From positions 186,001 to 250,000 of the IMG/VR virus record IMGVR_UViG_3300030085_002431: DNA of 64,000 nt. One strand, given 5' to 3'. Under the pieces are notes generated by a model. It did no database searches. It was not told where the DNA came from and saw only the letters and a list, made by a program, of their open reading frames with translations. Position numbers and translations under genes: made by a program. Shown piece after piece: positions 12,084 through 59,502 of the stretch (the first letter of the stretch is position 1; every line of letters begins with the position of its first letter).

Positions 12084-12155
12084 GCCCCCGTAGCTCAGTG
12101 GTAGAGCAGGGCTTTTGTAAAGCTCAGGTCGCAAGTTCAAATCTTGTCAGGGGCT
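12084..12155 (+). tRNA. tRNA-Thr(UGU)
   Basis: Cloverleaf: acceptor stem, D arm TAGCTCAGTGGTAGAGC, anticodon loop TTTGTAA, T loop GTTCAAATC. Confidence 0.92.
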
Positions 12156-37691: not shown

Positions 37692-37763
37692 GGGACTGTC
37701 GCATATTGGTTAATGCTCACTGCTTATAACGGTGTAAACTGGGTTCAATTCCCAGCAGTCCTA
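37692..37763 (+). tRNA. tRNA-Ile(UAU)
   Basis: Acceptor GGGACTG/CAGTCCT; anticodon stem CACTG/CGGTG with loop CTTATAA; T loop GTTCAATTC. Confidence 0.85.
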
Positions 37764-37766
37764 CTG

Positions 37767-37940
37767 AGGAACTTGAGACGTTCCCGACCAAAGGTGCCCA
37801 GCGGTTCGGATATACCGAAACCCTGTAGTTGGGAATCAGCCCCCTTTGGATATTTGCGGAGGACCTGCATCTTACTCCGTTACAAACTGTCAGTATGTTG
37901 GGTCTAGTGCCCCATAGCAAGCATACGGATAAGTGTAATG
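37767..37940 (+). ncRNA. Large structured RNA between two tRNAs (possibly manA motif)
   Basis: Pairings GGAAC/GTTCC, CCAAAGG/CCTTTGG, CCCAGC/GTTGGG, GGTTCGG/CCGAAACC, CTTACTCCGT/ACGGATAAG, GTATGTTG/CAAGCATAC; family identity from memory only. Confidence 0.6.
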
Positions 37941-37943
37941 TAT

Positions 37944-38027
37944 GGGAGTGTGGCGGAATCGGTAGACGCACCAGACTTAAAATCTGTTGGGAGTAATCCC
38001 GTGGGGGTTCAAGTCCCCCCACTCCTA
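37944..38027 (+). tRNA. tRNA-Leu(UAA)
   Basis: GGGAGTG/CACTCCT; loop CTTAAAA; long variable arm. Confidence 0.92.
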
Positions 38028-38042
38028 CTATTTCATTTTATT

Positions 38043-38624
38043 ATGATTACAACTGAACAATTCAAAGAAATCTGCGAGACTCAAGTTGATTGGAATAAAG
38101 TCTTTGGCACTTTCCGAGATGTTTCTGAAGACCCTGGACTGAAGAGTAACTCTGATAACTTCTTCCGTTCAAAAGCATTTGAACTTGCTGTTTGTTGCTG
38201 TTCCCCATTCAAATATGTGGATGAGGATGGTGTAGACTTTCACATGGAATATAATGGTGAAACTATTCGCATCGAACAGAAGGCACTGAAGGGTTTCTTT
38301 TATGGGAATGGTAAGTGTAAACAAGTTAAGATGAAAAACTATCGGGGTGATGTCAGTGAGGCAACATTCAACCGATACAAAACAGAAAACAAATTTGACT
38401 TCGTGATGATTGTTGATTACAAGAATCATAAAGTTGCCATCGCATCAAGAGAGACAGCACAGAAGTGTTATGTCAGTAAAGGTGATGGAGTGTTCTCCAT
38501 GTTCACACCAAGTGATATGACTATTTTGAATCTAGACTTAGATTACTTTTCTTTTCCATCTTCTCAAATTCGTCTATCTGATGTGATAAATGATACTATA
38601 GTTAATTGGATTAGAGAAAGATGA
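38043..38624 (+). CDS. Putative PD-(D/E)xK nuclease-like protein
   Basis: E...GVDF....IRIEQK pattern; true start follows tRNA-Leu. Confidence 0.45.
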   Translation: MITTEQFKEICETQVDWNKVFGTFRDVSEDPGLKSNSDNFFRSKAFELAVCCCSPFKYVDEDGVDFHMEYNGETIRIEQKALKGFFYGNGKCKQVKMKNYRGDVSEATFNRYKTENKFDFVMIVDYKNHKVAIASRETAQKCYVSKGDGVFSMFTPSDMTILNLDLDYFSFPSSQIRLSDVINDTIVNWIRER

Positions 38625-38778
38625 TTAACCTATTCAAACTAAGCATTGCTAGAGGACGTTGGGGTGCTCTGAGCAGAGTAGATAAAGAATTGGTAAGAAA
38701 TGCTTCCTTTGGCAAATTGATGGGAGCATGTTATATTAGAAGTAGTAGATTATCTTCCTGGAGTTGTAATACCTTAGA

Positions 38779-39621
38779 ATGAAACAATTTCCACTTAAAA
38801 CATGTCTGCGGTATCCAGGTGGCAAGAGTAAAGCACTGAAAACTCTTGCTCCCTGGTTTCCTAGTGACTTCAAAGAGTTTCGTGAACCATTTCTAGGTGG
38901 GGGTAGTATCTCCCTGCTCATCAGTCAGAACTATACGAGTTGCCCTATCTGGGTGAATGACAAGTATTTTTATTTGTATAATTTCTGGGTTCAACTTCGG
39001 GATAATGGTCTTGTATTAACAGAGAAACTGAGAAACATCAAACAAGAAGCTCTTGGTGATGATGAAGCACATAAAGAACTGTTCAAAAGGTATCAGAGTG
39101 ACATTGAAACTCTGGAACCCATTGAGCAGGCAGTTGCTTTCTTCGTGATGAATAAGTGTTCTTATTCTGGTTTGACTGAGAACTCCACTTTCTCTGTTCA
39201 GGCATCACGTTCTAACTTCTCTCTTGTTGGTATTGATAAACTGCCAAAGTATTCTTATATTATTAGAAACTGGAAGATTACTAACATTGACTATGCTGAA
39301 GTAATGAATGCTCCAGGTGAAGATGCTTTTGTATTCCTCGACCCTCCTTACGACATTAAAGACTTTCTTTATGGTACTGGTCGTAAACTTCATAGTTCTT
39401 TCAGTCATGAAAGGTTTGCTGATGATGTGGACTCGTGCCCGCATCGGTTCATGATTACATATAACGTGAATGACTGGTTGTTGAACCGTTACAAGGAGTA
39501 TAATCTCAATGAATGGAAACTCCGTTATTCAATGGTACACAGGGGTCAGAAGGGCACACAGGACAATGTGAAGACTGAATTGCTGGTTACTAACTATGAC
39601 CTGCCTGAGGTTGAAGTATAA
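38779..39621 (+). CDS. dam: DNA adenine methyltransferase (D12/Dam family)
   Basis: LRYPGGKS, EPFLGGGS, VND, FLDPPY. Confidence 0.9.
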   Translation: MKQFPLKTCLRYPGGKSKALKTLAPWFPSDFKEFREPFLGGGSISLLISQNYTSCPIWVNDKYFYLYNFWVQLRDNGLVLTEKLRNIKQEALGDDEAHKELFKRYQSDIETLEPIEQAVAFFVMNKCSYSGLTENSTFSVQASRSNFSLVGIDKLPKYSYIIRNWKITNIDYAEVMNAPGEDAFVFLDPPYDIKDFLYGTGRKLHSSFSHERFADDVDSCPHRFMITYNVNDWLLNRYKEYNLNEWKLRYSMVHRGQKGTQDNVKTELLVTNYDLPEVEV

Positions 39622-39647
39622 ATATACTTACGACCTGCTGAACGATA

Positions 39648-40382
39648 ATGAACCTCAACGACATTAACAATTTAACTAATAATATTCTTTCTGAGTCAAC
39701 ACACCAGAAAGATGATTTCTTGAATCGTTGGCCTTACACTTCACCATATTTGGAAGAGAAGAAGAGTTACAAGTACAAGAATTGTGGATGTGGTAAGAAC
39801 CCATGTGAAACTTATGGTGATAAAGCAGAACCAGTATCTGAAGGTGCAACCCATAAAGGTCTCGAAAAGGTAGCAAGCAAGTTAGAGGGTGCAAGTAAAG
39901 CACATGCAAAACAAGCAGCAAAGATTAGAGACCATGTTGAAGACATGAAGGAAGAGAATCTTGCTGAAATTGCACCTGCTCTTGCTGGTGTTCTAAAAAT
40001 GGGAGCAAAAGCAGCAGGAAAAGCAGCACTAAGAAAAGGTGCGATGAAGGTAGCAAACAAAGTTACTCAGAATCCTTCTGATGATGAGGAGATGAGTGAA
40101 GAACTCAATCCTAAACTCAAAGCAATTGATGCTAAGAATAAGGCAAGAGTTGAAGCAGAAGGTCGTGCCGCAGCAGCAGAAAGACAAAAGAGACGTGAAT
40201 CTGCCGATGCTTACAGAAAACATAAGAATGAAGTAATGGCAAAAGGTGGAAGACCTGTTGATGCACTTGATTCTTGGATGAGAAAGAAATTAGGTATGGA
40301 ACATGTTGAGACTGTATCTAAACTCATCGAATCCAATCAATTCTCTGAAGAAGAACTACTTAAAATTATTGAATCAATGTGA
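39648..40382 (+). CDS. Late protein, probable internal head protein
   Basis: TATAAATA at 39617; several L/V-x-E motifs; CGCG.NPC.TYG module. Confidence 0.55.
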   Translation: MNLNDINNLTNNILSESTHQKDDFLNRWPYTSPYLEEKKSYKYKNCGCGKNPCETYGDKAEPVSEGATHKGLEKVASKLEGASKAHAKQAAKIRDHVEDMKEENLAEIAPALAGVLKMGAKAAGKAALRKGAMKVANKVTQNPSDDEEMSEELNPKLKAIDAKNKARVEAEGRAAAAERQKRRESADAYRKHKNEVMAKGGRPVDALDSWMRKKLGMEHVETVSKLIESNQFSEEELLKIIESM

Positions 40383-40397
40383 ACTAATATCATTATT

Positions 40398-40976
40398 ATG
40401 AATTTTGAAATAATAAATGAAGACCTTTATTCGGTCACAGATTGTTTATCTTCGACCGATTTTTCATTGATTGATGATGAATTCAATTGTAGATATAATA
40501 ATTGGTTATTTACCAAAAAAGAAACTGATAGACCAGATTGGTATCCTTTAAGGGGATTTTTAGAAAAGAATGATACTGAGGATTGGAATCTAGGATATAA
40601 TTTTCAATTAATTAGAGTAGGAACAACAATAAAATTACATTGTGAGCATTTGTTGAAAAAAAAGTTGCTCTTTAAAAGAGTGCATACAAACATACAATTT
40701 TTTGGACAAGAATCTACATTTCATCAAGACACTGAAGAAAGAGAAAGTGGTAAAGATTGGTCTTTTTTAATTTTTGTTGATACTCATTGGAATACTGAAC
40801 ATGGTGGTGATTTTATTTGTATGTTAGAAAATGGTAAGTACAAAAATATTCCATTTATTCCTAATAACGGTGCTTTATTTAATTCTGTATTGGAACATAG
40901 AGGTGCTGCACCAAATGCACTTTGTTTACACAAACCAAGAAAAACTGTACAATTCTTATTTAATGAAATAGATTAA
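40398..40976 (+). CDS. 2OG-Fe(II) oxygenase
   Basis: FHQD...W....GG...PN.G.LF.S..EH.G..P. Confidence 0.8.
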   Translation: MNFEIINEDLYSVTDCLSSTDFSLIDDEFNCRYNNWLFTKKETDRPDWYPLRGFLEKNDTEDWNLGYNFQLIRVGTTIKLHCEHLLKKKLLFKRVHTNIQFFGQESTFHQDTEERESGKDWSFLIFVDTHWNTEHGGDFICMLENGKYKNIPFIPNNGALFNSVLEHRGAAPNALCLHKPRKTVQFLFNEID

Positions 40977-40983
40977 TTTTGTT

Positions 40984-41580
40984 ATGGATTTTATTTTAGA
41001 AACTTACATTAAAGATATTTCTATCTGTGACCGTTTAGTTGACTTTTTCAATAATTCAGAGTATTCTAGATTAAGAAAGAGACCAGGGACTACAAGTGGT
41101 GGAATTACTCCTACACAAAAAGAGTCTACGGATCTTTCAATTTTTCCTCAAGAATTTAGTGAACCAGAATTAAGTCCAATTGGTGATTACATCCCACAAT
41201 TATTTGGTTGTGTAGATGAATATGTTGCAAAATATGCATGGTGTAACGCATCTACAGCTCAATTTGGAATCCTAGAAAGAATTAATATTCAGTTCTACAA
41301 ACCTGGAGAGGCATTTCATGGATGGCATTTTGAACGTGGTAGTTCTGATTTCCCTGCTTGCGGAAGACATCTAGTTTGGATGACATATTTGAACGATGTT
41401 GATGATGGTGGTGGTACAGAATTCTTTTATCAAGAAAAAGTAACCACTGCAAGAAAAGGAAAAACTGTTATTTGGCCAGCAGATTGGACACATACACATA
41501 AAGGTGAAGTTTCCAACACTGAGCACAAATATATAATTACTGGTTGGTTAAATTACGACCTTACTTCTATAAAGATGTAA
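40984..41580 (+). CDS. 2OG-Fe(II) oxygenase
   Basis: WHFE...R.LVWMTYLNDV..GG.TEF...WPA.WTH.HKG...KYIITGW. Confidence 0.88.
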   Translation: MDFILETYIKDISICDRLVDFFNNSEYSRLRKRPGTTSGGITPTQKESTDLSIFPQEFSEPELSPIGDYIPQLFGCVDEYVAKYAWCNASTAQFGILERINIQFYKPGEAFHGWHFERGSSDFPACGRHLVWMTYLNDVDDGGGTEFFYQEKVTTARKGKTVIWPADWTHTHKGEVSNTEHKYIITGWLNYDLTSIKM

Positions 41581-41588
41581 TAAGTATT

Positions 41589-41673
41589 GGAGAGGTGGTC
41601 GAGTGGTTTATGGCACTGGTCTTGAAAACCAGCGATGTGCAAGCATCCGTGGGTTCAAATCCCACCCTCTCCG
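41589..41673 (+). tRNA. tRNA-Ser(UGA)
   Basis: GGAGAGG/CCTCTCC; loop CTTGAAA; long variable arm. Confidence 0.93.
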
Positions 41674-41702
41674 TTGACAGCACTAGCATTTTATGTTATA
41701 CT
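41674..41702 (+). promoter_or_regulatory. sigma70-type promoter
   Basis: TTGACA-17-TATACT with extended TG. Confidence 0.85.
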
Positions 41703-41708
41703 GTCTAG

Positions 41709-41779
41709 GTCAAGCAAATTACTTGACTGCGGTATTCCCCTTTGATGGATTCAGGAATAGCGGCGATAGGAATCCATCA
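41709..41779 (+). ncRNA. Hairpin plus H-type pseudoknot in the leader of tRNA-Val/Pro
   Basis: GTCAAG/CTTGAC; TATTCC/GGAATA crossed with TGATGGATTC/GAATCCATCA. Confidence 0.55.
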
Positions 41780-41782
41780 TAT

Positions 41783-41857
41783 GCTTGAATAGCTCAGAGG
41801 TAGAGCATCTCCTTTACACGGAGGCGGTCGGGGGTTCGATCCCCTCTTCAAGCACCA
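41783..41857 (+). tRNA. tRNA-Val(UAC)
   Basis: GCTTGAA/TTCAAGC; loop TTTACAC; encoded CCA. Confidence 0.92.
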
Positions 41858-41931
41858 CGGGACTTAGTTCAGTTTGGTAGAACGCTGCTTTTGGGAAGCA
41901 GAGGTCACAGGTTCAAATCCTGTAGTCCCGA
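41858..41931 (+). tRNA. tRNA-Pro(UGG)
   Basis: CGGGACT/AGTCCCG; loop TTTGGGA. Confidence 0.92.
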
Positions 41932-41963
41932 TTCCCTTCGGGGAACCTATCATATTCTTTATC

Positions 41964-42134
41964 ATGAAAATCAACTTATGGTATTCTAAGAGTATGTCGC
42001 AATGGCGGTGGACTCTTACAGAAGAGTTTAAGAATGGAGTTACTAAACTGGAACAGCATTCTGGTCAACACCCATTTCTTAGAGATGCTATGAATGATGT
42101 CGCTAACACAGTAGAATATCTTTTGGATAAATGA
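41964..42134 (+). CDS. Small hypothetical protein
   Basis: MKINLWYS..M.QWRWTL...LR.AM.DVA.TVEY. Confidence 0.65.
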   Translation: MKINLWYSKSMSQWRWTLTEEFKNGVTKLEQHSGQHPFLRDAMNDVANTVEYLLDK

Positions 42135-42838
42135 ACGTTATTAGTTTTCCTTCACCTTTTATTGCACAGTCTTCCATTGATGAAAAACTCCATTTGGAGT
42201 TGAAGTGTATGTACACTGAGATGGTACAAAAAGACCTGAGTCCGAATAAACAAAATTTTGCTGATGGTGACTTTAAAAGATTTAGTTCTAAAGCAAATAA
42301 TTACGAATCAGAAGTCTGGGGTGCTGGTGAATTAGAAGACTATAACGGTCGATTAGCAAAGCAACTTCAAAAAGCTTTCAATAAGGTAATTGAACATCAA
42401 CAATTTCCTCAGATATGTGTAGCTAGTAAAATTGATAAAGTATGGTGGGAGTTTTATGAACCCTATGGGTGTCGTCCAGTAGTTAATTATCCATGTTCTG
42501 ATTTTACAGGAATTTATGTAGTTGATTGTCAACAACATGATGTGATTAACTTCACTAGTCCTTTGATTTCTGTGACTTCAGGAAAGACACATTCTCCAGA
42601 AATAAAAGATGGAGATGTTCTTATTGCTCCTAGTGAACTTTTGATATCATCAAAGACATTTACTAAAAAATCTCTACTGTTCTATTTCACCATTGATTGC
42701 CAGTGGCAAGACTATGATGTTAAAACAAAAGAAGAACTATTTGGTCTTGAACAACAAAGTTCTGCTTTCAAACAAAAGTCTAGAAAAAGACTTTCTGGTT
42801 CAGTTGATGACCGTGTTAGACTGGGTGGGTATTTTTAG
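42131..42838 (+). CDS. Degenerate 2OG-Fe(II) oxygenase-like protein
   Basis: F.SP...GIY...P....GD.LI.PS.L fold motifs; metal-binding His residues not evident. Confidence 0.5.
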   Translation: MNVISFPSPFIAQSSIDEKLHLELKCMYTEMVQKDLSPNKQNFADGDFKRFSSKANNYESEVWGAGELEDYNGRLAKQLQKAFNKVIEHQQFPQICVASKIDKVWWEFYEPYGCRPVVNYPCSDFTGIYVVDCQQHDVINFTSPLISVTSGKTHSPEIKDGDVLIAPSELLISSKTFTKKSLLFYFTIDCQWQDYDVKTKEELFGLEQQSSAFKQKSRKRLSGSVDDRVRLGGYF

Positions 42839-42850
42839 GGTATGTACTAA

Positions 42851-42922
42851 TCCTCTTTAGCTCAGCGGTAGAGCGAACGACTGTTAATCGTTTGGTCCCT
42901 GGTTCGATCCCAGGAAGGGGAG
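42851..42922 (+). tRNA. tRNA-Asn(GUU)
   Basis: TCCTCTT/AAGGGGA; loop CTGTTAA. Confidence 0.92.
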
Positions 42923-42925
42923 TCT

Positions 42926-43007
42926 GTCGATGTGGCGGAATTGGTATACGCGCTGGGTTTAGGTTCCAGTGGAGCAATCCATGAAGGTTCAAGTCCTTTC
43001 ATCGACA
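42926..43007 (+). tRNA. tRNA-Leu(UAG)
   Basis: GTCGATG/CATCGAC; loop TTTAGGT; variable arm. Confidence 0.92.
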
Positions 43008-43017
43008 CTTCTTCATT

Positions 43018-43209
43018 ATGAAATTCTCTGAATATACATTTGGGGGTCGTCCTATTACTCCCATAAATCTTCTTCTTCTCATTAGTGAAATGGAAGGTAC
43101 TTACCAACATCTCAAATATATGGGATTTGAGGAAGATATGAATATTATTGATGAAATGAAGAAAAAGTACTATAAAATGTACTTCAAACTTAATAAAAAA
43201 GAAAAATGA
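43018..43209 (+). CDS. Hypothetical protein
   Basis: LISEMEG.YQHLKYMGF.EDM. Confidence 0.6.
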   Translation: MKFSEYTFGGRPITPINLLLLISEMEGTYQHLKYMGFEEDMNIIDEMKKKYYKMYFKLNKKEK

Positions 43210-43757
43210 TTAATAGGTGTTTTCCCAAAGATTTTTATATTAAGTTTGAAATTCCAAACTATGATGAACTTCTAGAATTTTGTGAAAAGAAAACTGAAGT
43301 AAACAATGAAAAGTTTACTTGGGGTGCTGATTGCAACCTGGATAGAGTTCCACTTAATGCTGAAGAGACTTCTTCTATTATTGGACCGTCTGTTCAACAA
43401 TTTGCTAAAATTCTAGGAAAAGACTTTGGATGTTATTCATCAGACCCTTGGATAAATCACTATACAAGAGGTTCTTATCAAGAGGTTCATTCTCATTCAG
43501 AAAATGATTTTGCTTCAGTATTTCTGTTGAATGATGGAGAAGAGTTTTCTCAGTTTTACTTCTATAATGAAGTGTCAATGGCAGAATCTAGATGGAGTCA
43601 TGCTGTTCCTGAGATTGCTAATAGCCAAATATATCCTATCTTAACAGAAGGTGAAGTAATTTTCTTTCCTGGTTGGTTACAACATGGTGTTACACCACAT
43701 AAAAGTGATATTGTAAGAAAAACTCTTGCATGTAATTATAATTTTGCATTTAACTAG
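43206..43757 (+). CDS. 2OG-Fe(II) oxygenase (TIGR02466-like)
   Basis: WIN.Y..G.YQE.HSH...EG..IFFP.WL.HGV.PH...RKT. Confidence 0.85.
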   Translation: MINRCFPKDFYIKFEIPNYDELLEFCEKKTEVNNEKFTWGADCNLDRVPLNAEETSSIIGPSVQQFAKILGKDFGCYSSDPWINHYTRGSYQEVHSHSENDFASVFLLNDGEEFSQFYFYNEVSMAESRWSHAVPEIANSQIYPILTEGEVIFFPGWLQHGVTPHKSDIVRKTLACNYNFAFN

Positions 43758-43830
43758 GGGGGTTTAGCTCAGTTGGTAGAGCACCTGCTTTGCAAGCAGG
43801 AAGTCAGGGGTTCGAGTCCCCTAACCTCCA
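43758..43830 (+). tRNA. tRNA-Ala(UGC)
   Basis: GGGGGTT/AACCTCC with G3:U70; loop TTTGCAA. Confidence 0.93.
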
Positions 43831-43846
43831 TGTAAAGAACAGAACT

Positions 43847-44302
43847 ATGAAAATAGAAGTAGAAGGTTCTCCTGTTCTCAGAAAGAAATCAAAAAGAGTT
43901 TCAAATATAAACAACGATATCCGAAAGTTTTGTGCTGAGATGGCACAGACAATGAGAGATGCAAAGGGTATTGGAATTTCAGCACCCCAGGTGGGGGTAT
44001 CTAAACGCATCATAATTGTTAATGATGGAGGAAATGATTGGGTATTGATTAACCCAGAAATTATTTGGGATGATGGTAAAAGAGTTTCTTTTAATGAGGG
44101 TTGTTTAAGTGTTCCTGGTGAATATGCAGATATTCTCAGACCAGACAGGATTAGGGTGAAATATAGAGAACTATCTGGGAGACCTCAGACTGTAGACTTA
44201 GACGGTTTATTGTCAAGGATAGTGCAACATGAAATTGACCACTTAAATGGCATTCTTTTCACAGATTACTTGACTGATAGAGGAAGTGCGATTACTATAT
44301 AA
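43847..44302 (+). CDS. def: Peptide deformylase
   Basis: GIGISAPQVG, EGCLS, QHEIDHLNG; short C-terminus. Confidence 0.95.
   Translation: MKIEVEGSPVLRKKSKRVSNINNDIRKFCAEMAQTMRDAKGIGISAPQVGVSKRIIIVNDGGNDWVLINPEIIWDDGKRVSFNEGCLSVPGEYADILRPDRIRVKYRELSGRPQTVDLDGLLSRIVQHEIDHLNGILFTDYLTDRGSAITI
44270..44298 (+). promoter_or_regulatory. sigma70-type promoter for tmRNA (inside def 3' end)
   Basis: TTGACT-17-TACTAT. Confidence 0.7.
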
Positions 44303-44304
44303 AG

Positions 44305-44545
44305 TGTTCAAGAGGTTGCGAAGTCTGTTGTTTTGGACAGGGGTTCGATTCCCCTCACCTCCATTCATGGGGGTGCCATGGTTTCGACAGGGCAAAAAGG
44401 TCGTAATTGTTGACGGGACATAAACATAGATGCAAACACATCTGAAACCGCAGCAAATAACATTGTTGCATTCTCCCGCAGCACCGTTGCTGCCTGAATG
44501 GGGGATGGGGGATAAGTCTTCCTTCTAATCCAATAGACTCTTGGG
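44305..44545 (+). ncRNA. ssrA: Circularly permuted (two-piece) tmRNA, cyanobacterial type
   Basis: T arm GGGGTTCGATTCCCC plus CACCTCCA (to 44363) precedes the 5' piece GGGGGTG..GGTTTCGAC (from 44369); G3:U70; tag ORF 44453-44497 ANNIVAFSRSTVAA*. Confidence 0.9.
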
Positions 44546-44565
44546 GGTGAGATGCCCCTCTTTTT
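44543..44565 (+). terminator. Intrinsic terminator after tmRNA
   Basis: GGGGGT-gaga-TGCCCCT followed by CTTTTT. Confidence 0.7.
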
Positions 44566-44606
44566 GTATAAATACTCCAGAGTTAATTAAACTTAGGATA
44601 CTTTTT

Positions 44607-44774
44607 ATGAAATCTTTAGTCGCAAAGGGTGCATCCAACGTAGCACCATTCGCAGCAGCATCTGCGGTCGCAATCTTTAGTGCCATTATTGGATTTGGTT
44701 TCTATCATGGGGCATTCCACATGAATGGAAACAGCACCCATTGCCATGCAGAAGGAGTATGCCATAACCACTGA
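44607..44774 (+). CDS. Small membrane protein with His/Cys-rich C-terminus
   Basis: TATAAATA at 44567; one TM helix; ends HCHAEGVCHNH. Confidence 0.55.
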   Translation: MKSLVAKGASNVAPFAAASAVAIFSAIIGFGFYHGAFHMNGNSTHCHAEGVCHNH

Positions 44775-44895
44775 TTATGAGTAAAACTATTATTATTGCC
44801 TTGATTGCATCTGCTGTCAGTATTACTACCTGGGAATGGATGCACATTGTTTATGGAGTTGATGAACTACCACAACAAACTATAGGAGTAAAGAA

Positions 44896-45111
44896 ATGAG
44901 CAGATTTAGAGACCTATTTGAAGGTGCAGCACCAGCACCACCAGAAGTTTTTGATGCACCTGCTGAATCAGCAGAACTAACCCCACCTCCAGCACCTGGA
45001 ACCATTAAAGAAGAGGTATTTGGGGAAGCAGCAGCACCTCCAGCAGTAGAGGTAACTGAACCAGAAGCAGCACCAGAAGCAACACCAGAACCAAGAACAT
45101 TTGGTATGTGA
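44896..45111 (+). CDS. Pro/Ala/Glu-rich small protein
   Basis: SD aggag; MSRFRDL. Confidence 0.55.
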   Translation: MSRFRDLFEGAAPAPPEVFDAPAESAELTPPPAPGTIKEEVFGEAAAPPAVEVTEPEAAPEATPEPRTFGM

Positions 45112-45178
45112 TGACAGTTGGGTAACTGTCCACTGATACCCCCACTACAACCGAGACGTGCTATGATTACTAGGTAAT
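45111..45178 (+). promoter_or_regulatory. Palindrome-linked early promoter (copy 6)
   Basis: ATGACA-N10-TGTCCA, TGcTATGAT, ATTAC-tag-GTAAT. Confidence 0.75.
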
Positions 45179-45181
45179 CAA

Positions 45182-45382
45182 ATGAAGGGCATGTCTCGGA
45201 TTTTTATTGAAGGGAAACAGTACGAACACATCAACGATGACATCCATGATGGGTGGTGGTTGATTCCTGAAGATGATGTTTTTGAGTCTATGGATGATGT
45301 TCTGGAAGATGAATTTGAATCCAAACTTGAAACTGAGGAAACAGATTGGTTTGGTGGTGAAGACCCACTAGCACAACTCTGA
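45182..45382 (+). CDS. Highly acidic small protein
   Basis: About one third Asp/Glu; first gene after the promoter cassette. Confidence 0.6.
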   Translation: MKGMSRIFIEGKQYEHINDDIHDGWWLIPEDDVFESMDDVLEDEFESKLETEETDWFGGEDPLAQL

Positions 45383-45411
45383 TTTAACTTTTCGTCCTTA
45401 ATTTTTTTATC

Positions 45412-45792
45412 ATGGCAACTCGTTCACGCATCGGTATTCAAATTGGTAACGATATTCTTTCTGCTTATCATCATTGGGATGGTTATCCTGAGTGGTTGGG
45501 TCGGATTCTCAAGACACACTACAATACGAAGGAGAAAGTAGCAGAACTCATTGACGGTGGTGATATGTCTGTTGCTTGGGGTGATGACAACAAACCTGAG
45601 TATTATGCTGACCGTGGTGAGGATTGTCCTCCTTCTTATATGTCTATGGATGAGTATCTCACCAAAGATAATAATGAAGAATATGCGTACATGTTCACTA
45701 GTGCTGGATGGGTTTGCTATAATATGAATGAGTTTGACGACTCAAAGCAACCTGAATTGGTTGAAATCTCTGATGTTCCTCTTGCTGCTTAA
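45412..45792 (+). CDS. Conserved phage hypothetical protein
   Basis: MATRSRIG...Y.HWDGYP...G..L..HY...ELIDGGDMS. Confidence 0.75.
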   Translation: MATRSRIGIQIGNDILSAYHHWDGYPEWLGRILKTHYNTKEKVAELIDGGDMSVAWGDDNKPEYYADRGEDCPPSYMSMDEYLTKDNNEEYAYMFTSAGWVCYNMNEFDDSKQPELVEISDVPLAA

Positions 45793-46397
45793 TGTTTGGA
45801 TGGAAAGTTGATAGTAATACGCAAAGATTTTCGGTATTTCCTACCTTAATCTATGTCATTGATATTCCTGAGGTTGTGGAAGACCTCGGGGATATTCTTT
45901 CTGCTGTAAAGTGGAGGATGCCAGATGATGATAGGAGTGGTTCGGAATCTTTCTTTGTTCTGGATGAACATCAGCACCTGAAGGATTTATTTACTGAGAG
46001 AGTAAATACTGCGGTGTCTGAATTGCAATATACTGTTCCATTAAAACTTACAACAAGTTGGTTTTTTAGGTTAAAACCTGGAGCAAAACATCCTAAACAT
46101 AAACATACCAATTCTTTTTGGAGTGCAAGTTTTTACTTTGAAAAAGGTGAAAGAGAAGCACTAAATATATCCGCACCTGCCCATGCTATCAATGTTCCAG
46201 TGAACACACAAGATATGGGGATAGTTCCATATGGAAGATTATCTTTCCCTGCGGAATGTGGTAAACTAATTTTGTTTCCCAGTCATATGGAACACTGGGT
46301 AAATGAAAACACCTTCAATAAAACTAGACACGTTCTGGCAATGAATTTCATGCCAGATGGAGAAACTGGTTTCCTAGATTCAACTTTCACCTATTAA
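45792..46397 (+). CDS. 2OG-Fe(II) oxygenase (TIGR02466-like)
   Basis: SW....PG..H..H.H.NS..S..FY...G.LILFPS...H.V..N.....R. Confidence 0.85.
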   Translation: MFGWKVDSNTQRFSVFPTLIYVIDIPEVVEDLGDILSAVKWRMPDDDRSGSESFFVLDEHQHLKDLFTERVNTAVSELQYTVPLKLTTSWFFRLKPGAKHPKHKHTNSFWSASFYFEKGEREALNISAPAHAINVPVNTQDMGIVPYGRLSFPAECGKLILFPSHMEHWVNENTFNKTRHVLAMNFMPDGETGFLDSTFTY

Positions 46398-46398
46398 A

Positions 46399-46599
46399 AT
46401 GACTACCAAACGTAAAATGGTCTGCGTTGACCCTCGTTCTAATGCTGCTCGTCTCCGTTTTGTGACTGAGATGAGTAAACTTCACTCTTGTTATATTGAT
46501 AATGAACTTAATGGTATTCTTTACCTGACTTCTATCAATGGCAAGTATCGTTTCAGTATGAATAAGAAAGAAGATAAGAACTGGGCAGTTGTAAAGTGA
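46399..46599 (+). CDS. Hypothetical protein
   Basis: V.P.S..A..RF...M..LHSC...L.SIN..Y.F...D..W. Confidence 0.6.
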   Translation: MTTKRKMVCVDPRSNAARLRFVTEMSKLHSCYIDNELNGILYLTSINGKYRFSMNKKEDKNWAVVK

Positions 46600-46757
46600 T
46601 TGACGAGCAAACTAGACTTATACTTGCTTTGTATCAAGTAGATAATTTAGTTGAACTTACTAAAGATAATGAATATAAACATTATCTCTACTGTAAGTTG
46701 TCATCTATTAAATGTGAATTAGAGAGACAACTACACAACATGGTCAATCCACCAAAG

Positions 46758-46816
46758 AAGACACTTGAGTAAGTGGCACACAGGGGGTTGCAAGACCCCC
46801 TTTTTGATGCCATACT
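46758..46816 (+). promoter_or_regulatory. Palindrome-linked promoter with embedded terminator (copy 7)
   Basis: AAGACA-N10-TGGCAC; GGGGGT-tgcaag-ACCCCC-TTTTT encloses the -35; CATACT -10. Confidence 0.7.
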
Positions 46817-46840
46817 AACGGAGTAGTCAACAAGGACCAC

Positions 46841-47005
46841 ATGAATCGTCCCGAAGTTCTTCTCACTGCTGCTGATTATCTTGAGGATATTAAAGCACGG
46901 TGGGAGATTCACCAGTATGAAGTAACTAAACTGCGTGAAGACATTGCAACTTGTTTCAATGCAATCACCGATGCTGCTTACTACACATCTACTGGACAAT
47001 TCTGA
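46841..47005 (+). CDS. Small hypothetical protein (54 aa)
   Basis: SD aagga; lies between two promoter cassettes. Confidence 0.6.
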   Translation: MNRPEVLLTAADYLEDIKARWEIHQYEVTKLREDIATCFNAITDAAYYTSTGQF

Positions 47006-47050
47006 TAGTGTCACAGGGGAGGTTGCGGACCTCCCTTTTTCATGTATAGT
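46993..47050 (+). promoter_or_regulatory. Palindrome-linked promoter with embedded terminator (copy 8)
   Basis: TGGACA-N10-TGTCAC; GGGAGGT-tgcgg-ACCTCCC-TTTTT; TATAGT. Confidence 0.7.
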
Positions 47051-47073
47051 TAAAGAGTCAAAGCAAACGAGAC

Positions 47074-47340
47074 ATGTTCTCAAACCTCTCTAAAATCAAA
47101 CCGAAATTTCGTACCTCTGGTCGAGTTTCTGGTAACTTTGGACGCAACAAAGTAAAAGCAGGTTCCTCTATGAAGGGAATCGGTGAAACTAATGCAAAGG
47201 TTCTAAAAATGACGACGCAAGAAGAGTATCTTCAACGTCTCCGTGATGCTTATGGCACTACTACAAATCCACGGATGAGGGAGTTCATCTATCTCGAAAT
47301 CCGTAAGATTATGGTACAACGGGGACAATGGGTAAAGTGA
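47074..47340 (+). CDS. Basic hypothetical protein
   Basis: SNLSKIKPK.RT.G..SGNFG. Confidence 0.65.
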   Translation: MFSNLSKIKPKFRTSGRVSGNFGRNKVKAGSSMKGIGETNAKVLKMTTQEEYLQRLRDAYGTTTNPRMREFIYLEIRKIMVQRGQWVK

Positions 47341-47513
47341 TTTATTCCTATGCAGAACTTGAATCGACTTATTATCAATTCAAGAATCTGATTGATAGAG
47401 AACGTAAACTTCATGAAATGGACATGATGATTAACCCCGAGCATCTTGATTTGCTTGAGTATGAAATCATGCCATTGATGGAGGAGATTGTTTTCTACGA
47501 CCCCACTCCTTGA
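47328..47513 (+). CDS. Hypothetical protein
   Basis: Overlapping start; ends DPTP. Confidence 0.5.
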   Translation: MGKVIYSYAELESTYYQFKNLIDRERKLHEMDMMINPEHLDLLEYEIMPLMEEIVFYDPTP

Positions 47514-47599
47514 ATACATAATTATCATGCTTGACAAAAAACAAGCATGATAGTATTATCAAACCATAATCAACTACTTTATTAGATTATCACTGTAAG

Positions 47600-47827
47600 A
47601 TGACTTACGATAACAAAACTCTTCAAGAGTACGAGAAAGAACTCAAAACTCAAAAGAAGAAGTTCGACAAGATGACCAAGCAATACAAGAAGTGTACTAG
47701 TAATTATCAAGCAGAAATGCTCTATGATGATTTGACTATCTTGAGTGAAGATATTCGACAACTACAACTTATTGTTAAAGAATTGCGTGAGGAAAAACGA
47801 CTTGCAAAAGTTCTTGAAGATGCCTGA
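47600..47827 (+). CDS. Coiled-coil hypothetical protein
   Basis: TTGACA-type promoter upstream (~47531). Confidence 0.55.
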   Translation: MTYDNKTLQEYEKELKTQKKKFDKMTKQYKKCTSNYQAEMLYDDLTILSEDIRQLQLIVKELREEKRLAKVLEDA

Positions 47828-48137
47828 TTTGTATAGTGAAGTTCTGAAATACGAACGTAACTTTCCATCTTATTTCGTTATGTCAAAATACACAAAAGAA
47901 TCATTTGCGGAAGAAATCTCCCGCAATTCTCAACTTCGGGATGATTTTCTGCAAGAATATGTTGATGATATTGTCTTCAACCTATCAATCAAAGAGTTGA
48001 GAAAAAGTTATTCAAACACTCTTTTGAATCTTCTGTATCAAGATTGTGATGCAGACCAAGAGGTTCAAATTGTTGAAGAAGTTGCAGACGTTCATCCACA
48101 CATTCTCAGAAGATTTGGAGTAGATGTGACAGTGTAA
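47820..48137 (+). CDS. Hypothetical protein
   Basis: MPDLYSE start overlaps upstream gene. Confidence 0.55.
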   Translation: MPDLYSEVLKYERNFPSYFVMSKYTKESFAEEISRNSQLRDDFLQEYVDDIVFNLSIKELRKSYSNTLLNLLYQDCDADQEVQIVEEVADVHPHILRRFGVDVTV

Positions 48138-48183
48138 CCACTGACACAAAACACTTTACAAACTAGTCACCATCTGCTAAGAT
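48126..48183 (+). promoter_or_regulatory. Palindrome-linked early promoter (copy 9)
   Basis: GTGACA-N10-TGACAC, TTTACA-17-TAAGAT. Confidence 0.7.
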
Positions 48184-48211
48184 GTATTCATCAAGTCAAG
48201 GAGATTCCCCC

Positions 48212-48361
48212 ATGGTTGACACCTGCACTCGTCACGATGATTATGAGACTTTTGCTGTAAAGTATCTGGGAGTTGACTATGAAGATTTTGTAAATCTTCA
48301 GTTGGGTTGCTCCGAAGATGATGATGATTTCACTGAGTATTATTACAATACTTCTCGGTGA
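48212..48361 (+). CDS. Acidic microprotein (49 aa), paralog of 25489-25632
   Basis: SD aggag; TRHDDYETFAVKYLGVDYEDF; terminator hairpin follows. Confidence 0.65.
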   Translation: MVDTCTRHDDYETFAVKYLGVDYEDFVNLQLGCSEDDDDFTEYYYNTSR

Positions 48362-48392
48362 TAATTAGTAGGGGTTAATTACCCCTCTATTT

Positions 48393-48466
48393 GTCTTGTT
48401 AGCTCAGATGGATAGAGCAACTGCCTTCTAAGCAGTCGGTCGAAGGTTCGAGTCCTTCACAAGACG
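48393..48466 (+). tRNA. tRNA-Arg(UCU)
   Basis: GTCTTGT/ACAAGAC; loop CTTCTAA. Confidence 0.92.
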
Positions 48467-48481
48467 TTATTTTTTAGAAAG

Positions 48482-55175: not shown

Positions 55176-55176
55176 T

Positions 55177-55233
55177 GTGCCACATGTTCTAGTGGCACAG
55201 TAAATGAGCACAGACCCCAAAATTTGCTATTCT
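55177..55233 (+). promoter_or_regulatory. Palindrome-linked early promoter (copy 14)
   Basis: Perfect GTGCCA-N10-TGGCAC; TGcTATTCT; near-identical to 58740-58793. Confidence 0.75.
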
Positions 55234-55259
55234 ATAGAAGTCGTCAGGGGATTGCCCAC

Positions 55260-55645: not shown

Positions 55646-55881
55646 GATTTGAAATCATATAATTACTTCTGAAGTTTATTTTCAAGACTAAAACAATCAA
55701 TGGAGAACGCAGTCAAGAACCAGATGCACACATCCGTAAATGTTACCATCTATTTTAATGCTGAAATGGATGATTTGGATGTGAAAGATTTTGTAGAATC
55801 TTCTCTTGAAAAGTATTGTCATCCTGATCATATTGTTCAGGATTATGAATACTGGCACTCCAATGAGTCTTGAGTGACGCA

Positions 55882-55950
55882 AGGACAGTTCTAACACTGT
55901 CCACTAAACCCCCCATGGCACCCTTCTGGGTGCTATCATTACGAAGTAAT
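55882..55950 (+). promoter_or_regulatory. Palindrome-linked early promoter (copy 15)
   Basis: AGGACA-N10-TGTCCA; GCACCC/GGGTGC; TATCAT; ATTAC-gaa-GTAAT. Confidence 0.75.
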
Positions 55951-57654: not shown

Positions 57655-57669
57655 GTCTTAAGTGACTCA

Positions 57670-57726
57670 AGGACAGTTCTAGCACTGTCCACTAAACCCC
57701 CCACACGGGGCAAAATCGTGTATTGT
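57670..57726 (+). promoter_or_regulatory. Palindrome-linked early promoter (copy 16)
   Basis: AGGACA-N10-TGTCCA; near-identical to copy 15; TATTGT. Confidence 0.7.
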
Positions 57727-58010: not shown

Positions 58011-58128
58011 CTGGGCAGTACAGTATTTAACGTAAGACCCAGCATGAGATGGCATACCCGTTACGGTCACTGTGCTGACGTTCCTGAGTGAACTTCCGTG
58101 GGTCGGTTAATCCTGTCAGCAACATCTC
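58011..58128 (+). ncRNA. Candidate structured RNA (pseudoknotted 5' leader)
   Basis: CTGGG/CCCAG; GAGATG/CATCTC; ACCC/GGGT; ACGG/CCGT; TCACT/AGTGA; loop GCTGAC pairs with GTCAGC. Confidence 0.55.
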
Positions 58129-58164
58129 TTTAGTACACAAACACAAACCACATTTAATTTCATT

Positions 58165-58335
58165 ATGTCTGCAACTGTTGAATTTTCTCGTGATGTCATG
58201 CTGGGTATGCTCCGCAAGGGCAAAAACGGCAAGGAAATCATGGACATTCTCAACGTGATTGCTCCTGAGTCTGATGGTGATTCTGCTGCCTCTGATTATG
58301 GTCAGGGCAACGGATTCGACCCGATTGACTTCTGA
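58165..58335 (+). CDS. Small protein (56 aa, not in ORF track)
   Basis: MSATVEFSRDVMLGMLRKG...; followed by GGGGAGTTA/TAACTCCCC hairpin. Confidence 0.65.
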   Translation: MSATVEFSRDVMLGMLRKGKNGKEIMDILNVIAPESDGDSAASDYGQGNGFDPIDF

Positions 58336-58385
58336 TTGAGTCGGGGAGTTAATAACTCCCCACATTTGTTTTTTTGTTTTATATC

Positions 58386-58724
58386 ATGAATCAAACTGAA
58401 CCCACCGAATTGCAATGCTCCCAAGTTTTTTGGGTAGTTGGTGCTGCTCAAAGACTTGCTAATCTTGGTTTACTCGATGAAGTACCGATTGGGATTGCAA
58501 TGGAGAAGAATGATGAATGGATTGAACTAGATAAAACTCGGCATTTTCTTTTTGAAAATGACTTTGAGATAGCATCAATCTTTTATGCTCTTGTTACTAA
58601 TGACGGGAAACTAGAAGATAATTATGATGAGAGTACTTTTGACAATATGACTCAAGTTCTCATTGATTACAAAGACAATCGAATCGAGTTGGTTCGATGT
58701 GCATTAGAGCACTGTCTTGTGTGA
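58386..58724 (+). CDS. Hypothetical protein
   Basis: WVVGA..RLA.LG. Confidence 0.55.
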   Translation: MNQTEPTELQCSQVFWVVGAAQRLANLGLLDEVPIGIAMEKNDEWIELDKTRHFLFENDFEIASIFYALVTNDGKLEDNYDESTFDNMTQVLIDYKDNRIELVRCALEHCLV

Positions 58725-58739
58725 GTCTAGTGCTCATGT

Positions 58740-58807
58740 GTGACACATGTACTAGTGGCACAGTAAATGAGCACAGACCCCAAAATCTGCTATCATTACA
58801 AAGTAAT
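58740..58807 (+). promoter_or_regulatory. Palindrome-linked early promoter (copy 17)
   Basis: GTGACA-N10-TGGCAC; TGcTATCAT; ATTAC-aaa-GTAAT. Confidence 0.75.
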
Positions 58808-58821
58808 CAATCAGGGACCGC

Positions 58822-59502
58822 ATGGACCGCAAGCAAGTCATCGAAAAGATTCAAGCAATCCTGAAACTTCAGGAAGGTACGACTTTCGATGGTGAAGCAG
58901 ATAATGCTGCTAAGATGATTGATATGCTGTGCAAAAAGTACGGTGTAACTATCGACGAAGCAACCGAAGTTCAGGTTGAAGATGAGATTTTCCTGAAGTT
59001 CAAGAAAATCAATGTTGCTTATGCAACTCTTCTCAATGCGATTGCATATTTCTATGATGCAAAAGCATATCTCAAAACCGATGTGAATGGAAACAAAACC
59101 ATTCAAGTTATTGGTTCTGAGGCACAACAGATTCAAGTGCGAATCTATTTCGATTATCTTGTAGATTGCATGGAGAAAGAAACTGAAACTGCACACAAAG
59201 CAGAGAAGATTATTGCTCAACTTCAGGGTAATAAACTCTCTCGCAGTTTCAAAACTAACTTCCGCAAAGGTTTTGCTGAGCAAGTTATGAACCGTCTGCA
59301 AGATAAGAAGAAACAAGAGGGTCGAGTTCATGAGCACAAAGCAGTGACCGATAAGGCACTCTCAACCCGTCGATTTAACACTTCTCGACGTATGAATGGT
59401 GCGAGTGGTTACGGTGGCAATGCTGGGGCATCTGCGGGTGGTTCAGTGTCACTTAACCGTCAGGCATCAGGTGCTTCACAAAAGCAAATTGTTGGGGTAT
59501 AA
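58822..59502 (+). CDS. DUF2786-like protein
   Basis: I.KI..IL.L......EA..A...I..L..KYG N-terminus; F..GFA..V..RL; G...G..V.L.R C-terminus. Confidence 0.7.
   Translation: MDRKQVIEKIQAILKLQEGTTFDGEADNAAKMIDMLCKKYGVTIDEATEVQVEDEIFLKFKKINVAYATLLNAIAYFYDAKAYLKTDVNGNKTIQVIGSEAQQIQVRIYFDYLVDCMEKETETAHKAEKIIAQLQGNKLSRSFKTNFRKGFAEQVMNRLQDKKKQEGRVHEHKAVTDKALSTRRFNTSRRMNGASGYGGNAGASAGGSVSLNRQASGASQKQIVGV

What the first reader, a model, noticed from the sequence alone, without database searches (positions are those of the whole stretch)
58011..58165. Riboswitch-like pseudoknotted leader in front of an unannotated 56-aa gene
Seen: a hairpin (CTGGG..CCCAG), then a closing helix GAGATG/CATCTC around nested helices ACCC/GGGT, ACGG/CCGT and TCACT/AGTGA. 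The apical loop GCTGAC is perfectly complementary to GTCAGC just inside the 3' closing strand. An unstructured A/C-rich linker leads to the ATG at 58165, which has no obvious SD. I do not recognise the fold as a known riboswitch or ribozyme. Inference: a novel cis-regulatory or catalytic RNA.
Basis: partly seen in the sequence, partly recalled or inferred. Interest (0 to 1): 0.7.

Follow-up and report, generated by a model that had tools for sequence, protein, structure and literature searches.

The report
Conserved structured leader RNA in cyanophage
In front of a small, real, conserved cyanophage gene lies an 86-base RNA module that is almost invariant in related phages, has a closing stem kept by compensatory mutations and can be missing entirely, so it is a genuine new structured leader element, though nothing shows it is a riboswitch or ribozyme.

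Summary
Folding energy is no better than shuffles (z +0.67), so the support comes from comparison. The window is the end of a 250.6-kb T4-like cyanophage record. The 56-aa ORF is a real gene: many homologues, pN/pS about 0.1-0.45, and a terminator behind it. The region has three parts.

- **Hairpin H1 (58011-58042).** One compensatory pair is seen in relatives.
- **The 86-nt module (58046-58131).** It is single-copy. 80 of 83 positions are invariant in at least 8 haplotypes whose neighbouring coding sequence differs by pS 0.05-0.31. It is precisely absent in one close relative (L100). In L102/L103 its closing stem P1 is rebuilt by two compensatory pairs.
- **The linker (58132-58164).** It is A/C-rich, G-poor and has no Shine-Dalgarno (SD) sequence. 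All 47 distinct leaders of the gene family share this feature.

The loop-tail helix extends to 8 bp, is rare by chance (p about 0.005-0.04) and gains a G.U>G-C change. The pseudoknot is therefore plausible but unproven. Two metatranscriptome assemblies start at 58033-58036, inside H1. There is no Rfam match, no expression platform, and the element occurs only in a narrow clade.

Best reading: a lineage-specific cis-acting leader domain that affects stability or translation, probably recognised by a protein or the ribosome. It is a new motif of moderate interest.

The parts
57655..57726 (+). PeSL-like hairpin plus promoter element upstream of the preceding gene. It is the probable start of read-through transcripts that cross the leader.
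   Evidence: One of four repeats of the same hairpin + (A/C)(G/C)TAAA + TGnTAT architecture in the window. The kind is described in PMC2839356 and PMC4122927.
57753..58004 (+). Upstream gene, 83 aa, phrog_500, function unknown.
   Evidence: It is syntenic in every locus that carries the module.
58011..58042 (+). Hairpin H1. The outer stem is CTGGG/CCCAG and the loop motif is ACAGTATTTAAC.
   Evidence: Fold z -1.87. The G-C>A-U compensatory pair in the H1b copy of L102/L103/L086/L087 is shown. In H1a of L102 the stem is kept while the loop is replaced by a longer hairpin. The loop motif is unique in the genome.
58033..58036 (+). RNA 5' end (transcription start or processing site) inside the 3' half of H1.
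   Evidence: Contigs of two metatranscriptomes from one study begin here, with no cover of the upstream gene. X4 has an 811-nt contig from 58036. X11 has a 200-nt contig aligned from 58036 plus 3 unaligned nt. TATTTA (58024-29) lies 7 nt upstream, but no canonical sigma-70 promoter was found.
58046..58131 (+). 86-nt structured module, a discrete insertion/deletion unit. P1 is 58046-51/58123-28, P2 58056-60/58099-103, P3 58064-66/58096-98 and P4 58067-71/58087-91. The loop-tail helix is 58073-80/58114-21.
   Evidence: Precisely absent in L100. 80 of 83 positions are invariant in at least 8 haplotypes. P1 has two compensatory pairs, and there are G.U>G-C changes at 58060/58099 and 58080/58114. 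It is single-copy. No Rfam match.
58132..58164 (+). Unstructured, A/C-rich, G-poor, SD-less linker; the translation-initiation region.
   Evidence: Fold z +2.08. Its sequence varies between haplotypes while its composition is kept. Across 47 distinct family leaders the composition is A 41.5%, C 33%, G 3.3%, against 17% G upstream of other ORFs in the window.
58165..58335 (+). Gene for a 56-aa protein: a conserved N-terminal 36 residues, then a variable acidic tail ending in D-F.
   Evidence: 23 protein clusters. 34 viral and 64 metagenomic loci. pN/pS is 0.10-0.45 in 7 of 8 comparisons. No Pfam or PHROG family. Two helices are predicted at low confidence.
58343..58361 (+). Intrinsic terminator-like hairpin with a T-run, ending the unit.

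Best explanation
The region is the leader of an SD-less mRNA for a small ORFan gene, in a hyperplastic, cassette-rich part of a large T4-like cyanophage genome.

**Transcripts.** Some enter from the upstream gene. Others begin at about 58033-58036, inside hairpin H1. Whether that end is an internal promoter or a processing site is unresolved.

**The module.** The next 86 nt (58046-58131) fold into a compact domain closed by P1. It contains a bulged hairpin (P2-P4) whose apical loop can pair with the 3' junction, which would make an H-type pseudoknot.

**The linker.** The domain is followed by a G-poor A/C-rich stretch that stays single-stranded. I infer that it serves as the ribosome (S1-type) landing pad.

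**How it works (inferred).** The module acts in cis on the mRNA's stability and/or translation. The near-invariance of its loops suggests that a protein or the ribosome recognises it, rather than a metabolite. The architecture is that of the T4 gene 32 operator: a 5' pseudoknot followed by an unstructured stretch that reaches the AUG.

**Shown:** the gene is real; the sequence is under constraint; P1 and H1 are base-paired; the module is a discrete indel; the linker is a family-wide feature; there is an RNA 5' end near 58036.

**Inferred:** the pseudoknot, the binding partner, and the direction of any effect on expression.
For: **Gene.** Homologues. pN/pS is 0.10-0.45. A terminator follows it.

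**Constraint.**
- The module shows 0-2 substitutions plus one 1-nt indel. The adjacent 171-nt CDS shows 4-26 substitutions, and the linker differs at about 14-50% of its positions.
- pS of the CDS is 0.05-0.31.
- Eight haplotypes differ only at 58086, 58094 and 58099, and in L102 also at P1 and 58114.
- The 1-nt indel at 58086 excludes a coding explanation.

**Structure.**
- P1 has two compensatory pairs (G-C>U-A and U-A>C-G), and 100% of cells are paired in the revised reader fold.
- The G.U>G-C changes at 58060/58099 (several haplotypes) and 58080/58114 fit an RNA of the + strand.
- The loop-tail helix is rare by chance and is the best-predicted helix in the ensemble, with P(unpaired) 0.04-0.12.
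- The nested MFE alternative breaks pairs at 58094 and 58086.

**Leader.**
- RNA contigs cover the leader and the gene, and two start at 58033-58036.
- The linker is G-poor in all 47 family leaders and unusually unstructured.
- More distant homologues have a promoter element, then a 5' hairpin or larger stem-closed inserts, then the same kind of linker.
Against: - Folding energy of the module is ordinary.
- Covariation rests on a single divergent lineage (L102/L103), so it may be one evolutionary event. P2-P4 never vary in an informative way.
- The module is dispensable in L100. In L102 a second hairpin (H1b) lies between it and the linker, so close coupling to the start codon is not conserved.
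- Recombination in a mosaic phage region could inflate the apparent conservation.
- The 5' end comes from assembled contigs of one study, not from mapped primary 5' ends. Other runs have contigs that cross H1.
- No partner protein is identified. The 56-aa product has no recognised RNA-binding fold.
Confidence: 0.45

Rival explanations
1. A metabolite-binding riboswitch (a new class) controls translation of the 56-aa gene.
For: - The domain is compact and closed by P1, and the stem covaries while the interior is invariant. This pattern is typical of aptamers.
- A pseudoknot is possible.
- It lies in a 5' leader, and riboswitch-like motifs are known in cyanophages (own knowledge).
Against: - No Rfam match, even at E<=10.
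- No terminator and no helix that sequesters the start codon. A 33-nt unstructured linker intervenes.
- It occurs only in one narrow clade, before one ORFan with no metabolic link.
- It is absent in L100 and displaced in L102.
Confidence: 0.1
2. A generic structural stabiliser or insulator. Any stable 5' domain protects the mRNA from RNase E/J, or keeps the linker free, with no specific partner.
For: - Other lineages carry unrelated hairpins or stem-closed inserts at the same place, or none at all, while the linker is always kept.
- An RNA 5' end lies just upstream.
- 5'-terminal stem-loops are known stabilisers (own knowledge).
Against: - The loops and junctions are also invariant. A purely generic structure would not need that.
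- 10 unpaired nt would precede P1 if the 5' end is at 58036.
Confidence: 0.2
3. A small selfish or recombination-borne insertion (MITE-like or cassette debris) with no function of its own. Its conservation reflects a recent spread.
For: - Clean presence/absence polymorphism (L100 against the window).
- Terminal inverted repeat.
- It sits in a hyperplastic region full of PeSL-like shuffling elements.
- Weak similarity to a promoter-region variant of related leaders.
Against: - Single copy in the genome, and found in no other context.
- No target-site duplication.
- The termini covary while the interior is fixed, the reverse of what transposon ends show.
- It is present in lineages whose CDS differ by pS about 0.3, yet only 2 of 71 interior sites differ.
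Confidence: 0.1
4. A separate small RNA, or a self-cleaving ribozyme, transcribed or processed from the intergenic region.
For: - An RNA 5' end lies 10 nt upstream of P1.
- In L102 the module is separated from the linker by another hairpin.
- The topology is pseudoknotted.
Against: - No ribozyme family matches.
- No contig ends or joints were seen inside the module other than at strain-variable sites.
- No terminator follows the module.
- RNA contigs run on into the gene (X4 58036-58847).
Confidence: 0.08

Closest known systems
T4 gene 32 mRNA translational operator (own knowledge of the T4 literature)
   Same: A structured, pseudoknot-type element at the 5' side of the leader is followed by a long unstructured stretch running into the start codon. 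T4 gene 32 mRNA is also generated or stabilised by 5' processing.
   Different: - There is no sequence similarity.
- The linker here is A/C-rich rather than A/U-rich.
- The product is a 56-aa protein with no sign of an OB-fold single-strand-binding domain.
- Autoregulation is untested.
PeSLs: promoter-early stem-loop cassettes of T4-type phages (PMC2839356, PMC4122927)
   Same: - The window has four repeated hairpin+promoter elements flanking small ORFans.
- Distant homologues of the 56-aa gene carry such an element directly upstream.
- H1 marks the recombination boundary of the cassette in L086 against L102.
   Different: - The 86-nt module is not repeated and has no promoter consensus.
- It lies downstream of the presumed RNA start.
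- H1's loop motif is unique in the genome, and its promoter function is unproven.
Pseudoknotted riboswitch aptamers found in marine bacteria and phages (for example the glutamine-II/Downstream-peptide motif, SAM-II/V, preQ1)
   Same: Similar size (about 80 nt), a closing stem that covaries around a fixed core, a possible loop-tail pseudoknot, and a position upstream of a short ORF.
   Different: No model match in Rfam 15. No expression platform. A very narrow distribution. Dispensable in close relatives.
SD-independent, S1-dependent translation enhancers (CA-rich leaders such as the TMV omega-type poly-CAA; own knowledge)
   Same: The family-wide ACAAAC/CAA-rich, G-poor leader with no SD.
   Different: This concerns only the linker, and binding to S1 was not tested.

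Membership tests
Riboswitch (any class) | Match to a curated aptamer model | tested here: not met
   Rfam 15 at gathering thresholds gives nothing in 58011-58165. At E<=10 there are only chance-level hits, for example SAM-Chlorobi at 16.3 bits against a gathering score of 35. The related loci also give nothing.
Riboswitch (any class) | Expression platform: a terminator, or an alternative helix that hides the RBS or start codon | tested here: not met
   No terminator lies between the module and the ATG. The linker and start region are mostly unpaired in the ensemble and less structured than shuffles.
Riboswitch (any class) | Aptamer helices supported by covariation across diverse lineages | tested here: inconclusive
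   Only P1 has two-sided changes, and these are in one lineage. P2 and the loop-tail helix have one-sided G.U>G-C changes. P3 and P4 never vary.
Riboswitch (any class) | Specific ligand binding | not testable with these tools
   Needs in-line probing or ITC.
Known self-cleaving ribozymes | Match to a ribozyme model, or an RNA end at a cleavage site inside the element | tested here: not met
   No ribozyme family appears at E<=10. The recurrent RNA end is at 58033-58036, upstream of P1, not inside the module.
H-type pseudoknot | Both helices (P2-P4 and loop-tail) form in the same molecule | tested here: inconclusive
   The two helices share no nucleotides. The loop-tail helix is rare by chance. 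The variable sites fit the pseudoknot better than the nested fold does. No compensatory change discriminates between the two.
PeSL (promoter-early stem-loop) | A stem-loop joined to a sigma-70-like promoter, repeated in hyperplastic regions | tested here: not met
   This is met by the four repeats at 55176, 55880, 57655 and 58735. It is not met by H1 or the module: both are unique in the genome, and no canonical promoter was found.
MITE-like mobile element | Multiple copies, target-site duplication and conserved terminal repeats | tested here: not met
   Single copy. Only 1 nt of junction ambiguity in L100 against the window. The terminal repeat covaries instead of being conserved.
T4 gene 32-type operator | The regulated product is a cooperative single-strand nucleic-acid-binding protein that binds its own leader | not testable with these tools
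   The product has no family match, and the model is of low confidence.

The most novel reading that the evidence does not exclude
The module is a new phage-specific pseudoknotted RNA sensor, for a small molecule or for a host or phage protein. It would gate SD-independent, S1-type initiation on the adjacent A/C-rich landing pad. That would be a switch whose expression platform is ribosome recruitment rather than RBS masking.
Probability: 0.12. Interest if true: 0.75.

Novelty: new member of a known kind. Interest (0 to 1): 0.45.

Why it matters
Cyanophage hyperplastic regions are full of ORFans whose regulation is unknown. This case pairs an SD-less, A/C-rich initiation region, conserved across a whole gene family, with an exchangeable structured 5' domain. 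One version of that domain is under far stronger constraint than the protein it precedes.

If the module binds a factor, it would be a handle on how these phages control early genes in hosts where SD-independent initiation is common. Natural alleles are already available as controls: module present (the window), absent (L100) and displaced (L102). If it is only a stabiliser, it still documents modular turnover of leader structures beside PeSL-type cassettes.

Tried and rejected
- **Rfam** on the window, on the region at E<=10 and on 12 related loci gave nothing relevant.
- **The reverse strand** folds no better than shuffles (z -0.75). The G.U/G-C variation fits only the + strand.
- **Coding explanations.** The antisense ORF 58027-58365, the overlapping + ORF 58088-58258 and the 81/86-aa upstream extensions called in some metagenomes are excluded by the 1-nt indel at 58086 and by non-conserved frames. 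The uORFs starting at 58044 and 58049 are absent in L102.
- **Searches for the module elsewhere.**
  - Two viral contigs patterns were tried. One gave only chance hits plus the G3 leaders. The other gave none.
  - Genome contigs gave none.
  - The phage isolate collection matched only the upstream gene at DNA level and gave no protein match.
  - A covariance model run over 54 sources and over the window's own genome found only the window, L102 and L103.
- **Descent of the module from the PeSL-like promoter element.** Local alignment is only marginal (p 0.03-0.05, one shared 10-14-mer).
- **Long-range pairing** of 58037-58047 with codons 11-14 of the gene. It dominates the MFE but is broken without compensation in L081, L099 and L102.
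- **HDV-like or other ribozyme topologies** built around the 58036 end did not fit and had no model support.
- **Protein structure.** The prediction was too weak (pLDDT 59) to justify a fold search. The protein atlas gave no hit.
- **The genome search 'relatives'** is not available for a virus record.

Full report
**Context.** The window is bases 186001-250000 of a 250,613-bp viral record. DNA matches are to T4-like Synechococcus myoviruses. The window carries a cyanobacterial-type permuted tmRNA and about ten tRNAs. The finding lies in a stretch of small ORFans. Four copies of a hairpin-plus-promoter repeat punctuate this stretch (55176-55240, 55880-55940, 57655-57726, 58735-58800). This architecture is the one described as PeSLs, the composite terminator/promoter cassettes that mediate ORFan shuffling in T4-type phages (PMC2839356, PMC4122927).

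**Observation.** The loop-tail complement extends to 8 bp (UGCUGACG 58073-80 with UGUCAGCA 58114-21). The last 20 nt before the ATG contain no G.

- Single-sequence thermodynamics gives no support. The whole region has z +0.67, the reverse strand -0.75, the module -0.19 and the P2-P4 hairpin -0.13.
- H1 alone reaches z -1.87.
- The linker plus start region is significantly less structured than shuffles, z +2.08.
- With the unpaired bases shuffled, a loop-tail helix of 7 Watson-Crick pairs arises in 0.5% of trials, and 8 pairs including G.U in 4%.
- Rfam 15 gives no match at gathering thresholds, and only chance-level hits at E<=10.

**The gene is real.**
- The 56-aa ORF has relatives in 34 viral contigs, 64 metagenome contigs and 23 protein clusters.
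- The first 36 residues are nearly invariant. The tail is acidic, variable and ends in D-F.
- pN/pS against the window is 0.10-0.45 in seven of eight comparisons.
- A terminator-like hairpin with a T-run follows at 58343-58361.
- The protein belongs to no Pfam or PHROG family. Its model is weak, showing two helices and a disordered tail.

**Anatomy from comparison.** Close relatives (77-100% amino-acid identity) divide the region into three parts.

1. **H1 (58011-58042).** In L102, L103, L086 and L087 a second copy (H1b) has CTAGG/CCTAG in place of CTGGG/CCCAG. That is one compensatory pair, with the loop motif ACAGTATT(T)AA kept. In H1a of L102 the stem is kept and the loop is replaced by a longer hairpin.
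2. **The 86-nt module (58046-58131).**
   - It is precisely absent in L100 (89% amino-acid identity), where the sequence reads CCCAGCAT|AGTACAC.
   - It is present in L102/L103, between H1a and H1b.
   - It is single-copy in its genome.
   - It was found in no other context: not in viral contigs, prokaryote genomes, phage isolates or the 54 sources scanned with a covariance model.
3. **The linker.** Its sequence varies freely, but its composition is fixed. Across 47 distinct leaders of the whole gene family it is A 41.5%, C 33%, G 3.3% and T 22%. Upstream of other ORFs in the window, G is 17%.

More distant (largely freshwater) homologues have a different arrangement. They carry a PeSL-like promoter element, then a G-rich 5' hairpin or larger stem-closed inserts (or nothing, as in L018 and L109), then the same kind of linker.

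**Constraint.**
- Against the window, the module shows 0-2 substitutions plus a 1-nt indel.
- The adjacent 171-nt CDS shows 4-26 substitutions, and the linker differs at about 14-50% of its positions.
- Synonymous divergence of the CDS is 0.05-0.31.
- At least eight module haplotypes exist. Apart from L102, they differ only at 58086 (G, A or deleted), 58094 (U/A) and 58099 (U/C), in almost every combination. The other 80 positions are fixed, loops included.
- The indel rules out coding on either strand.
- Metatranscriptome contigs show the same picture. Variants are dense in the flanking genes. Inside the element they occur only at 58086, and just after P1 at 58130.

**Structure tests** (alignment A1, six haplotypes).
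- P1 has two fully compensatory pairs in L102: G-C>U-A and U-A>C-G.
- P2 and the loop-tail helix each have a G.U>G-C change.
- P3 and P4 never vary.
- The nested MFE and RNAalifold fold shares P1 and the GCUGACG/YGUCAGC helix. It loses pairs at 58094 and 58086.
This is modest support for P2-P4, and so for a pseudoknot.
- By rough reckoning the two folds are about isoenergetic. No pseudoknot-aware program was available.
- The G.U/G-C alternations are compatible only with an RNA of the + strand.

**RNA evidence.** Many marine metatranscriptomes hold the region.
- In two samples of one study, contigs begin at 58036 (X4; 811 nt, running through the gene) and at 58033-58036 (X11). In both there is no cover of the upstream gene.
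- In four other runs, contigs cross H1 from the upstream gene.
- An RNA 5' end inside the 3' half of H1 is therefore likely, alongside read-through transcripts.
- TATTTA (58024-29) lies 7 nt upstream of 58036 and TACAGT (58019-24) slightly further. The consensus scan finds no sigma-70 promoter there, and spacing to a -35-like CTGATA is not conserved in L081.
- Promoter and processing site therefore cannot be told apart.

**Interpretation.** The element is a genuine, constrained, structured part of the leader of a real gene.

The family-wide constant is the G-poor, SD-less linker. The structured domain upstream of it is exchangeable between lineages. In the marine clade of the window it has become one specific module that tolerates almost no change. 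That combination argues for a cis-acting role in mRNA stability and/or translation, with recognition by a macromolecule.

Three observations argue against a classical riboswitch:
- there is no expression platform;
- the distribution is narrow;
- the module is dispensable in L100 and displaced in L102.

Three observations argue against a selfish element:
- it is single-copy;
- it has no target-site duplication;
- its termini covary around a fixed core.

The closest known architecture is the T4 gene 32 operator, a 5' pseudoknot followed by an unstructured run into the AUG. That is a resemblance in how it may work, not family membership.

**Verdict.** It is a new member of a known kind, of moderate interest.

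Noticed in passing
window 44274-44588 (tRNAs at 37692-48467 and 12084-12155): The phage carries a permuted, cyanobacterial-type tmRNA with tag peptide ANTSETAANNIVAFSRSTVAA, beside about ten tRNA genes.
   Followed up: no
window 55176-55240, 55880-55940, 57655-57726, 58735-58800: Four repeats of a hairpin (GTGCCAC..GTGGCAC or GGACAG..CTGTCC) + (A/C)(G/C)TAAA + TGnTAT promoter-like box. Each lies before a small ORF. They are PeSL-like cassette boundaries, and the same element precedes distant homologues of the 56-aa gene.
   Followed up: partly
window 58037-58047 with 58196-58206: An 11-nt perfect complement between the 3' half of H1 plus CAUGA and codons 11-14 of the 56-aa gene. It dominates the MFE of the transcript, but synonymous changes break it without compensation in L081, L099 and L102.
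   Followed up: yes
window 58165-58335: The 56-aa product has two predicted helices (residues 9-17 and 22-31) joined by a G-x-x-G turn, and a disordered acidic tail ending D-F. From memory this resembles helix-extended-helix motifs and SSB-type acidic tips. No family match was found.
   Followed up: partly
L004-L008, L015, L020, L034, L110 (upstream of the gene match): In some relatives the short G-rich 5' hairpin of the leader is expanded by 60-70-nt stem-closed inserts, for example GATAAC..GTTATC enclosing two mini-hairpins. Structured inserts therefore turn over at this position.
   Followed up: no
L016, L030, L141 (promoter region) against window 58096-58109: A shared CCG(Y)TGGGTCGGTT and CACTGTGC between the module and the promoter region of one leader type. 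The alignment is only marginally better than shuffles (p 0.03-0.05).
   Followed up: partly
L068 and L069: The same 276-kb metagenome contig holds two copies of the locus about 8 kb apart in opposite orientation. This is probably an assembly artefact or a terminal repeat.
   Followed up: no
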